From NCBI RefSeq assembly GCF_001194135.2, contig NC_068991.1, forward strand, positions 470,582 to 534,581: a DNA stretch of 64,000 bases. The letters are read 5' to 3'. The DNA comes from Octopus bimaculoides. Taxonomy: Eukaryota. The notes beneath the pieces are model-generated. The model was not told the DNA's origin and ran no database searches. It saw only the letters and a list, made by a program, of their open reading frames with translations. Within the stretch, counting starts at the first letter, position 1. Every line of letters begins with the position of its first letter. Positions 14,827 through 57,467 of this stretch are shown one piece after another. A program made the position numbers and the translations under genes.

Positions 14827-57467
<42,641 letters not shown>

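What the first reader, a model, noticed from the sequence alone, without database searches (positions are those of the whole stretch)
37933..37950. Candidate 18-nt frame-preserving microexon in NCKAP1 intron 26
Seen: about midway through a 6.9-kb intron lies tttttttctctctcatttctgaacatcag|AGCCCAGAATGTCAGCAC|gtaaga, with a pyrimidine tract, TCTC motifs, AG and a near-consensus donor. Exon 26 ends phase 1, so inclusion changes RKLQ-N-VDSVLL to RKLQ-KPRMSAH-VDSVLL with no stop. The flanks (about 37450-38800) hold few recognisable transposons. Known: 3-27 nt frame-preserving microexons are a neural programme driven by Srrm3/4-type eMIC proteins and often hit cytoskeletal genes; vertebrate NCKAP1 has, as I recall, a separate 18-nt alternative exon near its N-terminus. 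Inference: an unannotated, possibly neural, cephalopod insert in the WAVE scaffold. The UGC motif usually found near eMIC-dependent acceptors is not obvious here.
Basis: partly seen in the sequence, partly recalled or inferred. Interest (0 to 1): 0.75.

Follow-up and report, generated by a model that had tools for sequence, protein, structure and literature searches.

The report
Conserved 18-nt NCKAP1 microexon in molluscs
The 18-base candidate is very probably a real, ancient, optionally included mini-exon of the actin-regulator gene NCKAP1/Hem, because the same mini-exon sits in the same intron of a second cephalopod-like genome, a mussel and snails, where mRNAs with and without it are already annotated.

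Summary
Window 37933-37950 (AGCCCAGAATGTCAGCAC) lies between ...catcAG and GTAAGA, inside the 6,930-nt intron between exons 34690-34783 and 41714-41796. Inclusion turns RKLQ-N-VDSVLL into RKLQ-KPRMSAH-VDSVLL.

The splice-like pattern alone is not beyond chance: 15 similar sites lie on the + strand and 7 on the - strand of the window. Conservation is what decides it.
- In an independent contig (L001; exons 27-28 95% identical in protein, 78% in DNA, introns unalignable), the 18-mer and both splice sites match at 25 of 26 bases. They lie on the same strand, 9.4 kb upstream of exon 27.
- Mytilus has an 18-nt microexon in the same intron and phase, encoding (R)PKQSA(N).
- Littorina and Arion have a 24-nt version. 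Littorina's four RefSeq isoforms include or skip it.

So it is a mollusc-wide cassette microexon, not a cephalopod novelty. It lengthens the turn between two helices, at human NCKAP1 S898/S899.

Not testable here: neural or eMIC dependence (no UGC motif is present) and whether octopus annotation already has it.

A second conserved 21-nt microexon (45576-45596, PAHVKQQ) lies in the intron after the next exon.

The parts
34690..34783 (+). Encodes [31 protein letters not shown] plus 1 nt, so it ends in phase 1 (CTGCAGA|gtaagt).
   Evidence: Aligns to human NCKAP1 868-898. The same intron position and phase occur in Littorina and Mytilus.
37902..37932 (+). 3' splice region of the microexon: a pyrimidine tract with UCUCUC (cttttttttctctctcatttctgaacatcAG). 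The nearest upstream AG is 44 nt away. There is no UGC.
   Evidence: Pyrimidine fraction is 0.74 over -40..-3. The L001 orthologue has a pyrimidine fraction of 0.82 and a 135-nt AG-exclusion zone.
37933..37950 (+). The 18-nt cassette microexon AGCCCAGAATGTCAGCAC. It encodes (K)PRMSA(H) across two split codons.
   Evidence: 17/18 nt identical in L001:628-645, with both splice sites conserved. Mytilus has an 18-nt counterpart at L005:18285-18302 and Littorina a 24-nt counterpart at L004:28709-28732. Single copy in the window.
37951..37956 (+). 5' splice site GTAAGA, near consensus.
   Evidence: GTAAG is conserved in L001, Mytilus and Littorina.
37957..38037 (+). Weakly conserved downstream intronic flank. 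It includes CTGTAGA at 37980-37986, which L001 has at about the same offset. Possibly a splicing-regulatory element.
   Evidence: blastn of L001 624-729 against window 37929-38037 gives 69% identity, E = 7e-8. The T-rich composition inflates this score, so the evidence is weak.
41714..41796 (+). Encodes (N)[27 protein letters not shown].
   Evidence: The L001 orthologue at 10038-10120 has 78% nt identity.
42670..42750 (+). Next constitutive exon. Encodes [27 protein letters not shown] and ends in phase 0.
   Evidence: L001:12916-12996 is 100% identical in protein and 78% in DNA.
45576..45596 (+). Second conserved microexon, 21 nt: CCAGCTCATGTGAAGCAGCAG, encoding PAHVKQQ. It has a weak donor, GTTCGT. 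It was not part of the finding.
   Evidence: L001:14673-14693 is 19/21 identical and both changes are synonymous. Littorina has PPGLKQQ and Mytilus HSSMKQQ, both sharing AAACAACAG|GTTNGT.
52581..52665 (+). Exon following the 21-nt microexon. Encodes [28 protein letters not shown].

Best explanation
Window 37933-37950 is a genuine, evolutionarily old cassette microexon of the NCKAP1/Hem gene, which encodes the Nap1 scaffold of the WAVE regulatory complex.

**How it is spliced.** It is spliced between the exons ending at 34783 and starting at 41714. It uses a long pyrimidine-rich acceptor region and a near-consensus GTAAGA donor.

**What it does to the protein.** It keeps the reading frame and replaces Q-N-V with Q-KPRMSAH-V. 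This lengthens the very short turn between two long alpha-helices of the C-terminal part of the protein. In human NCKAP1 the site lies between S898 and S899. The insert adds a basic, Ser-containing peptide whose core P-[KR]-x-S-[AP] is shared by cephalopod, bivalve and gastropod versions.

**How it is used.** By analogy with its orthologues it is optionally included. It combines with a second 21-nt microexon two introns downstream (45576-45596), which would give up to four C-terminal isoforms.

**Shown here:** the anatomy, the frame, conservation of the exon and its splice sites, orthologous alternative isoforms in other molluscs, and the loop location.

**Inferred:** that it is alternative in octopus; that it changes a surface property or a regulatory (possibly phospho-acceptor) site of the WAVE complex rather than the fold; and any tissue specificity.
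For: 1. **Anatomy and frame:**

2. **Second cephalopod-like locus, L001** (ENA ERZ21867824).
   - CAG|AACCCAGAATGTCAGCAC|GTAAG lies at 625-650, on the same strand, 9.4 kb upstream of the exon-27 orthologue.
   - It has 1 mismatch in 26. No shuffle matched at up to 3 mismatches.
   - The flanking intron is only about 40% identical, which is random level.
   - Across 20 kb, the only collinear blastn hits are the two constitutive exons and the two microexons.

3. **Synonymous sites are frozen.** Third codon positions differ at 29/54 in the two constitutive exons but at 0/5 in the microexon (Fisher P = 0.028). With the 21-nt exon added, the count is 2/12 (P = 0.020).

4. **Same intron, same phase 1, in other molluscs.**
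   - Mytilus edulis L005:18285-18302, tag|GACCCAAGCAATCAGCAA|gtaaga: 18 nt, 10/18 identical in register, with shared CCCA and TCAGCA blocks.
   - Littorina saxatilis L004:28709-28732: 24 nt.

5. **Annotated products with and without the insert.**
   - Littorina XP_070198955/56/57/58 are all four combinations of the two microexons.
   - Mytilus CAG2248603 has RPKQSA, while CAG2248601/02/04/05 lack it.
   - The Arion vulgaris sequences carry TPYKNAPC.

6. **The site tolerates insertion.**
   - 79 of 87 homologues have the short form, and human NCKAP1 shows a clean 6-residue gap.
   - In an AlphaFold model of Littorina X2 (pLDDT 88.5; TM 0.87 to 3p8c_B), the insert 319-326 is the non-helical link between helices 307-318 and 327-359.

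7. **No competing feature.** It is not a repeat and not a known RNA.
Against: - No transcript evidence for octopus could be reached. The protein collection returned no cephalopod NCKAP1 at all.
- Inclusion, skipping and tissue pattern in this species are therefore all inferred.
- The organism behind L001 is not identified. 'Cephalopod' is inferred from 95% protein identity over two exons, against 69% for Littorina.
- Exon 26 of L001 lies outside the fetched stretch, so 'same intron' there rests on order, strand and the absence of an exon-26 match in between.
- Homology to the Mytilus exon rests on position, phase, length and 10/18 nt (P about 0.01), which is suggestive but not conclusive. The gastropod version needs two codon indels to align.
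- The evidence type behind the Littorina and Mytilus isoform models was not inspected.
Confidence: 0.85

Rival explanations
1. Chance pseudoexon: a fortuitous AG...GTAAGA pair in a long AT-rich intron that the spliceosome never uses.
For: Splice-like microexon patterns are common. The window holds 15 on the + strand and 7 on the - strand, about half of them with a length divisible by three. No octopus transcript was seen.
Against: The exon and both splice sites match at 25/26 bases in a locus whose introns are otherwise saturated. Counterparts in the same intron and phase occur in Mytilus and Littorina, and they appear in annotated mRNAs.
Confidence: 0.03
2. A real exon, but constitutive in cephalopods: always included, with no skipped isoform.
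For: Conservation alone does not distinguish constitutive from alternative use. The donor is strong (GTAAGA) and the pyrimidine tract is long.
Against: The orthologous exon is alternative in Littorina (four isoforms) and Mytilus. Frozen synonymous sites (0/5 against 29/54) are typical of regulated alternative exons. The short form is the rule across animals, 79 of 87.
Confidence: 0.08
3. A conserved intronic non-coding element that only resembles an exon, for example a splicing silencer or enhancer, a recursive-splicing site, or a small RNA.
For: It is a short island of conservation in a long intron, with a weakly conserved downstream flank.
Against: - The conservation boundaries coincide exactly with AG and GTAAG.
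- A recursive site needs AG|GTRAGT to regenerate a donor, whereas here AG is followed by AGCCCA.
- No Rfam family matches at E up to 1.
- The equivalent sequence is translated in annotated Mytilus, Littorina and Arion proteins.
Confidence: 0.03

Closest known systems
Mytilus edulis NAP125/NCKAP1 isoform CAG2248603.1 (P0035): 18-nt microexon at L005:18285-18302
   Same: Same gene, same intron (after ...RQLT/RKLQ plus 1 nt), same phase 1, same 18-nt length. First microexon downstream of the upstream exon. GTAAGA donor. Peptide pattern x-P-[KR]-x-S-A-x. Present in only one of five annotated isoforms, so it is alternative.
   Different: Only 10/18 nt are identical. Mytilus has two further 21-nt microexons (NTKNTSS, EFSSLVQ) in the same intron. 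These have no conserved counterpart between the 18-nt exon and exon 27 in the octopus-L001 comparison.
Littorina saxatilis membrane-associated protein Hem-like isoforms X1-X4 (XP_070198955-58), and Arion vulgaris A0A0B7AA37 / A0A0B7AAR7
   Same: A cassette microexon at the identical protein position and phase. It is combined freely with the downstream 21-nt microexon, giving all four combinations. The core is P-x-K-x-S-P.
   Different: 24 nt (8 aa: MPHKNSPS or TPYKNAPC) instead of 18 nt. Aligning it needs two codon indels, and Ser is followed by Pro rather than Ala.
Human/vertebrate NCKAP1 exon 2: an 18-bp neuronal microexon
   Same: Same gene family, same 18-nt length, frame-preserving. Included in neurons and skipped in progenitors (PMC10842930).
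   Different: It lies near the N-terminus. The octopus exon inserts at the equivalent of human S898/S899, where human NCKAP1 has no residues. The two are not homologous. This looks like recurrent microexon evolution within one gene.
eMIC (Srrm234 / SRRM3/4)-dependent neural microexons
   Same: 3-27 nt, frame-preserving, in a cytoskeletal regulator. The AG-exclusion zone is long (44 nt in octopus, 135 nt in L001). Octopus has a UCUCUC-containing pyrimidine tract. These features are listed for eMIC exons in PMC8797185.
   Different: There is no UGC within 100 nt upstream in either cephalopod-like locus and no CUAAY branch point. L001 has no UCUC. Neural restriction and Srrm234 dependence are untested. 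The cited paper stresses that eMIC programmes were almost completely rewired between phyla.

Membership tests
Frame-preserving alternative cassette microexon (3-27 nt) | Length 3-27 nt, a multiple of 3, no stop codon on inclusion | tested here: met
   18 nt. Q-N-V becomes Q-KPRMSAH-V.
Frame-preserving alternative cassette microexon (3-27 nt) | Canonical AG acceptor with a pyrimidine tract, and a GT donor | tested here: met
   ...ttttttttctctctcatttctgaacatcAG| and |GTAAGA.
Frame-preserving alternative cassette microexon (3-27 nt) | Exon and splice sites conserved in orthologous introns of other species | tested here: met
   L001 matches at 25/26 bases. Mytilus and Littorina have counterparts in the same intron and phase.
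Frame-preserving alternative cassette microexon (3-27 nt) | Both inclusion and skipping isoforms exist | tested here: inconclusive
   Met for the orthologues: Littorina X1-X4 and five Mytilus isoforms. Not testable for octopus, because no transcripts or proteins of it were retrievable.
eMIC/Srrm234-dependent neural microexon | UGC motif close upstream of the 3' splice site | tested here: not met
   No TGC within 100 nt upstream in the window or in L001. Positions are inconsistent in Mytilus and Littorina.
eMIC/Srrm234-dependent neural microexon | Long AG-exclusion zone and a long pyrimidine tract with UCUC; strong CUAAY branch point | tested here: inconclusive
   AG-exclusion zone is 44 nt in octopus and 135 nt in L001. 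UCUCUC occurs only in octopus. Neither has CUAAY. Criteria are taken from PMC8797185.
eMIC/Srrm234-dependent neural microexon | Neuron-restricted inclusion that depends on the eMIC domain | not testable with these tools
   This needs tissue RNA-seq and a perturbation or minigene assay.
Vertebrate NCKAP1 exon-2 neuronal microexon (orthology) | Same position in the protein and gene | tested here: not met
   The octopus insert maps between human S898 and S899. The human microexon is exon 2 (PMC10842930).
Recursive splice site / RS-exon | AG immediately followed by GTRAGT, so that a 5' splice site is regenerated after the first splicing step | tested here: not met
   AG is followed by AGCCCA. Joining CTGCAGA to AGCCCA creates no GT donor.
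NCKAP1/Hem (Pfam PF09735) host gene | Sequence homology to Nck-associated protein 1 | tested here: met
   E = 9e-132 to 3p8c_B residues 759-1124. All hits carry PF09735.

The most novel reading that the evidence does not exclude
NCKAP1/Hem carries a pair of microexons that have been kept since at least the bivalve-gastropod-cephalopod ancestor. One is 18-24 nt and sits in the helix-helix turn at human S898/S899. The other is 21 nt, has a conserved weak GTTNGT donor, and lies two introns downstream. The two are combined freely to give four WAVE-complex scaffolds.

In the most novel reading, both are neuron-enriched. The first would install a conserved basophilic-kinase phospho-acceptor, P-[KR]-x-S. 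That would give neurons a switchable site on the WAVE regulatory complex, in a gene that evolved a neuronal microexon independently in vertebrates.

A 7-residue segment with the same [LIVM]-[KR]-x-Q ending is hard-wired in some intron-poor invertebrate Hem genes. This hints that the second exon may be older than molluscs.
Probability: 0.3. Interest if true: 0.65.

Novelty: new member of a known kind. Interest (0 to 1): 0.45.

Why it matters
Outside vertebrates, very few microexons are known to be conserved over hundreds of millions of years. The fly-mammal comparison concluded that microexon programmes were almost completely rewired between phyla (PMC8797185).

Here two microexons in the core scaffold of the WAVE actin-nucleation complex appear to be kept across three mollusc classes. 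The same gene has separately acquired a neuronal 18-nt microexon in vertebrates, and that exon is linked to autism cohorts (PMC10842930). NCKAP1 is therefore a candidate 'hotspot' gene for recurrent microexon evolution.

It also gives a concrete, testable handle on isoform-specific WAVE-complex regulation in the large nervous systems of cephalopods: a 6-residue basic, Ser-containing loop at a defined position of a solved structure.

For genome annotation, the result shows that a check for intronic conservation rescues microexons that ab initio models miss.

Tried and rejected
**Searches and look-ups that led nowhere**
- I searched the 5.8-billion-protein collection with the inclusion peptide, hoping for cephalopod transcripts. 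Only two genomic ORF fragments came back. One of them, luckily, led to locus L001.
- The 382-aa query also returned no cephalopod protein. The claims 'unannotated' and 'expressed' therefore could not be tested.
- I scanned JGI metagenome contigs with a wobble-tolerant pattern for the microexon plus its splice sites. There were 0 hits.
- Look-ups of P0004 and P0035 in the contig index failed, because only the longest product of a gene is on record. The longest isoforms, P0127 and P0133, worked.
- The recent cross-bilaterian tissue-splicing preprint that includes Octopus bimaculoides has no supplement held.
- The Chen et al. 2010 WAVE-complex structure paper was not retrievable under the PMC id I remembered.
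- The Arf-WRC paper gave nothing about residue 898. I therefore could not say which WAVE-complex subunit or ligand the loop faces.

**Structure prediction**
I modelled the Littorina X2 orthologue instead.

**Readings considered and rejected**
- Repeat or transposon origin.
- A known structured RNA.
- A recursive splice site, because no donor is regenerated.
- Orthology with human exon 2, because the position differs.

**Motif searches with no consistent result**
- UGCAUG, YCAY, GU-rich and CUAAY motifs show no pattern that holds across species.

**A correction to my own reading**
- The 'D' that tblastx and P0002 show in front of VD(S/N)VL comes from reading the acceptor G. It is not a real residue. 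The junction residue of L001 is therefore unknown: it would be K, identical to octopus, if its exon 26 also ends in A.

Full report
**1. The observation**

The sequence is exactly as described: tcttttttttctctctcatttctgaacatcag|AGCCCAGAATGTCAGCAC|gtaaga, with the 18-mer at 37933-37950.

- The upstream exon is 34690-34783. It ends CGT AAA CTG CAG A|gtaagt, in phase 1.
- The downstream exon is 41714-41796. It follows gttacag| and begins AT GTC GAC.
- The intron is 6,930 nt.
- Skipping gives ...RKLQ-N-VDSVLL... Inclusion gives ...RKLQ-KPRMSAH-VDSVLL....
- I assembled eleven constitutive exons from 31646 to the stop codon at 57467.
- The 382-aa product aligns to human NCKAP1 residues 759-1124 at E = 9e-132. 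The host gene is therefore NCKAP1/Hem.
- The exon numbers 26 and 27 cannot be checked, because the 5' part of the gene is outside the window.

**2. Is the pattern itself special?**

No.

- I scanned for a pyrimidine tract of at least 70%, then AG, then 3-30 nt, then GTRAG. This finds 15 sites on the + strand and 7 on the - strand. Eight and four of these have lengths divisible by three.
- A reader of 64 kb will therefore meet several such sites by chance.
- This one is nevertheless the only frame-preserving, stop-free candidate in its intron.
- It is single-copy.
- It lies in sequence with no other copy in the window.
- It has no Rfam match.

**3. Conservation in a second, distant locus**

The protein search returned a 62-aa ORF fragment (P0002) from an ENA metagenome assembly. 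Its 110-kb contig gave locus L001.

*How close is L001?*
- It carries the orthologues of exon 27 (10038-10120) and the next exon (12916-12996).
- These are 52/55 identical in protein but only 78% identical in DNA. Third codon positions differ at 29 of 54.
- Intron sequence next to the exons is about 40% identical, which is random level.
- The same two exons are 69% identical in protein between octopus and Littorina.
- L001 is therefore a deeply diverged relative. Another cephalopod is the most plausible source, but that is an inference.

*What L001 shows*
- On the same strand, 9.4 kb upstream of exon 27, L001 reads ttgtCAG|AACCCAGAATGTCAGCAC|GTAAGc.
- That is 17/18 bases of the exon, plus both splice sites.
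- None of 100 shuffles of L001 gave a match, even at three mismatches.
- In a blastn of all 20 kb of L001 against the window, the only significant collinear hits are exon 27, exon 28 and two short islands. One island is this microexon (E = 7e-8). The other is a 21-nt element described in section 6.
- Inside the microexon, all five complete codons are identical, including four degenerate third positions. That is 0/5 against 29/54 (Fisher P = 0.028).
- The single difference (AG against AA) falls in the split first codon. It would be synonymous (K) if exon 26 of L001 also ends in A.
- Conservation that begins at AG and ends at GTAAG, in an otherwise saturated intron, is the signature of a used exon. 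Frozen synonymous sites are typical of regulated alternative exons.

**4. The same microexon in other molluscs**

A search with the 382-aa C-terminus gave 221 homologues.

- At this position, 79 of 87 informative sequences have the short form. Molluscs stand out as exceptions.
- Littorina saxatilis reads RKLQ-MPHKNSPS-DVDIVL.
- Arion vulgaris reads RKLM-TPYKNAPC-DADVLL.
- Mytilus edulis reads RQLT-RPKQSA-N....
- Cluster members show four Littorina RefSeq isoforms of 558, 551, 550 and 543 aa. These are exactly the four combinations of this insert and a second one.
- Five Mytilus isoforms are annotated, and only one carries RPKQSA.

*Genomic loci*
- Littorina L004:28709-28732 is a 24-nt exon, tag|TGCCGCATAAGAATTCACCCAGCG|gtaagt.
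- Mytilus L005:18285-18302 is an 18-nt exon, tag|GACCCAAGCAATCAGCAA|gtaaga.
- Both lie in the intron after ...CAG A| or ...ACA A|, in phase 1, as in octopus.
- Octopus and Mytilus share the length, the phase, the blocks CCCA and TCAGCA (10/18 in register, P about 0.01), and the peptide pattern x-P-[KR]-x-S-A-x.
- The gastropod exon aligns codon by codon after two codon indels.
- The common core is P-[KR]-x-S-[AP].

The exon is therefore mollusc-wide, not a cephalopod novelty. Its orthologues are alternative.

**5. Where it lands in the protein**

- Human NCKAP1 shows a clean six-residue gap, KRLS------SVDSVL, between S898 and S899.
I modelled Littorina X2, which carries the insert, using 54 homologues.
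- The model has mean pLDDT 88.5 and pTM 0.85. Its TM-score is 0.87-0.88 to NCKAP1 chains of 3P8C, 4N78 and 7USC/D/E.
- In the model, helix 307-318 ends at ...RKLQ, residues 319-326 (the insert) are non-helical, and helix 327-359 starts at DVDIVL.
- The microexon therefore lengthens a very tight inter-helix turn without disturbing the fold.
- The site also varies in length in a few other lineages, which fits a tolerant surface loop.
- I could not determine which WAVE-complex subunit the loop faces.

**6. A second microexon (not in the finding)**

- Window 45576-45596 reads cacag|CCAGCTCATGTGAAGCAGCAG|gttcgt. It lies in the 9.8-kb intron between 42750 and 52581, is in phase 0, and encodes PAHVKQQ.
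- L001:14673-14693 is 19/21 identical, and both changes are synonymous.
- Littorina (PPGLKQQ, L004:60327-60347) and Mytilus (HSSMKQQ, L005:30734-30754) share AAACAACAG|GTTNGT, including the unusual weak donor.
- It is alternative in both species.
- Mytilus has extra microexons in both introns.
- Some intron-poor invertebrate Hem genes encode a similar 7-residue segment (VENLKYQ, MQNLKFQ) within one continuous exon. The second exon may therefore predate molluscs.

**7. Mechanism and regulation**

*Shown*
- A strong donor, a 30-nt pyrimidine-rich acceptor region, and a 44-nt AG-exclusion zone (135 nt in L001).
- A weakly conserved downstream flank that includes CTGTAGA at about +30 in both cephalopod-like loci.

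*Comparison with the published eMIC code*
- The published code is: long AG-exclusion zone, UGC near the 3' splice site, UCUC-rich tract, strong CUAAY branch point (PMC8797185).
- The match here is partial. There is no UGC within 100 nt in either cephalopod-like locus. There is no CUAAY. UCUC occurs only in octopus.
- Neural or eMIC-dependent inclusion is therefore neither supported nor excluded.

*Inferred*
- The exon is optional in octopus, as in its orthologues.
- It modifies a surface loop.
- The conserved [KR]-x-S could be a basophilic-kinase site. This last point is speculative.

**8. Known relatives and novelty**

- The vertebrate 18-bp NCKAP1 microexon is exon 2, near the N-terminus, and is neuronal (PMC10842930). 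It is not homologous to this one.
- No paper in the held library describes C-terminal NCKAP1/Hem microexons. The orthologous exons do exist in the public Littorina and Mytilus annotations.
- I therefore class the octopus exon as a new member of a known kind.

**9. Verdict**

The microexon is real. It is not cephalopod-specific. The claims 'neural' and 'unannotated' are undecided.
- Interest is moderate.

Noticed in passing
window 45576-45596 (+); L001:14673-14693; L004:60327-60347; L005:30734-30754: A second conserved 21-nt microexon (PAHVKQQ) lies in the 9.8-kb intron two introns downstream. It has a conserved weak donor, GTTNGT, and the 3' half AAACAACAG is shared by octopus, L001, Littorina and Mytilus. 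It is alternative in Littorina and Mytilus isoforms.
   Followed up: yes
L005 (Mytilus edulis) ~21293-21313, ~24016-24036, 28068-28088: Mytilus has three further 21-nt microexons: NTKNTSS and EFSSLVQ in the first intron, and MKTVVNK in the second. That makes five microexons around two constitutive exons. None has a conserved counterpart in the octopus-L001 comparison.
   Followed up: partly
L006:3001-4209 and L007:3001-4224 (P0028, P0014; unidentified invertebrates): The C-terminal ~400 aa of Hem are encoded here without introns. They contain a fixed 7-residue segment (MQNLKFQ / VENLKYQ) at the position of the 21-nt microexon, ending in the same [LIVM]-[KR]-x-Q. This hints that the exon is older than molluscs and became fixed when the introns were lost.
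   Followed up: partly
L002:472-528 and L003 (ENA metagenome contigs, GC about 45%): In an unidentified short-intron animal, the intron homologous to the 6.9-kb octopus intron is only about 57 nt and in frame. A gene caller read straight through it (P0001). There is no microexon there.
   Followed up: partly
window 4690, 5273, 51655, 59070, 60146 (+): A dispersed repeat family has at least five copies in the window. One of its frames reads ...LSSNS(T/A)KVDFAFHPFRVD(E/D)ISTS... It is probably a SINE-like element of this genome.
   Followed up: no
window 38246-38255 and ten other N runs (for example 36948-37063 and 42934-43223): Assembly gaps. One lies 296 nt downstream of the microexon and one about 870 nt upstream. 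Part of the regulatory flank is therefore unknown or of uncertain length.
   Followed up: no
window 53429-53588 (-) and L001:19519-19677 (-): A short tblastx similarity (48-82% over 11-29 aa) lies outside the collinear exon series. It is probably the remnant of a shared transposon family rather than part of NCKAP1.
   Followed up: no
L004:42444-46979 (-): A full-length retrotransposon polyprotein ORF of 1,511 aa (RVT_1, RNase H, integrase rve, SCAN) lies inside the Littorina intron that carries the 24-nt microexon.
   Followed up: no
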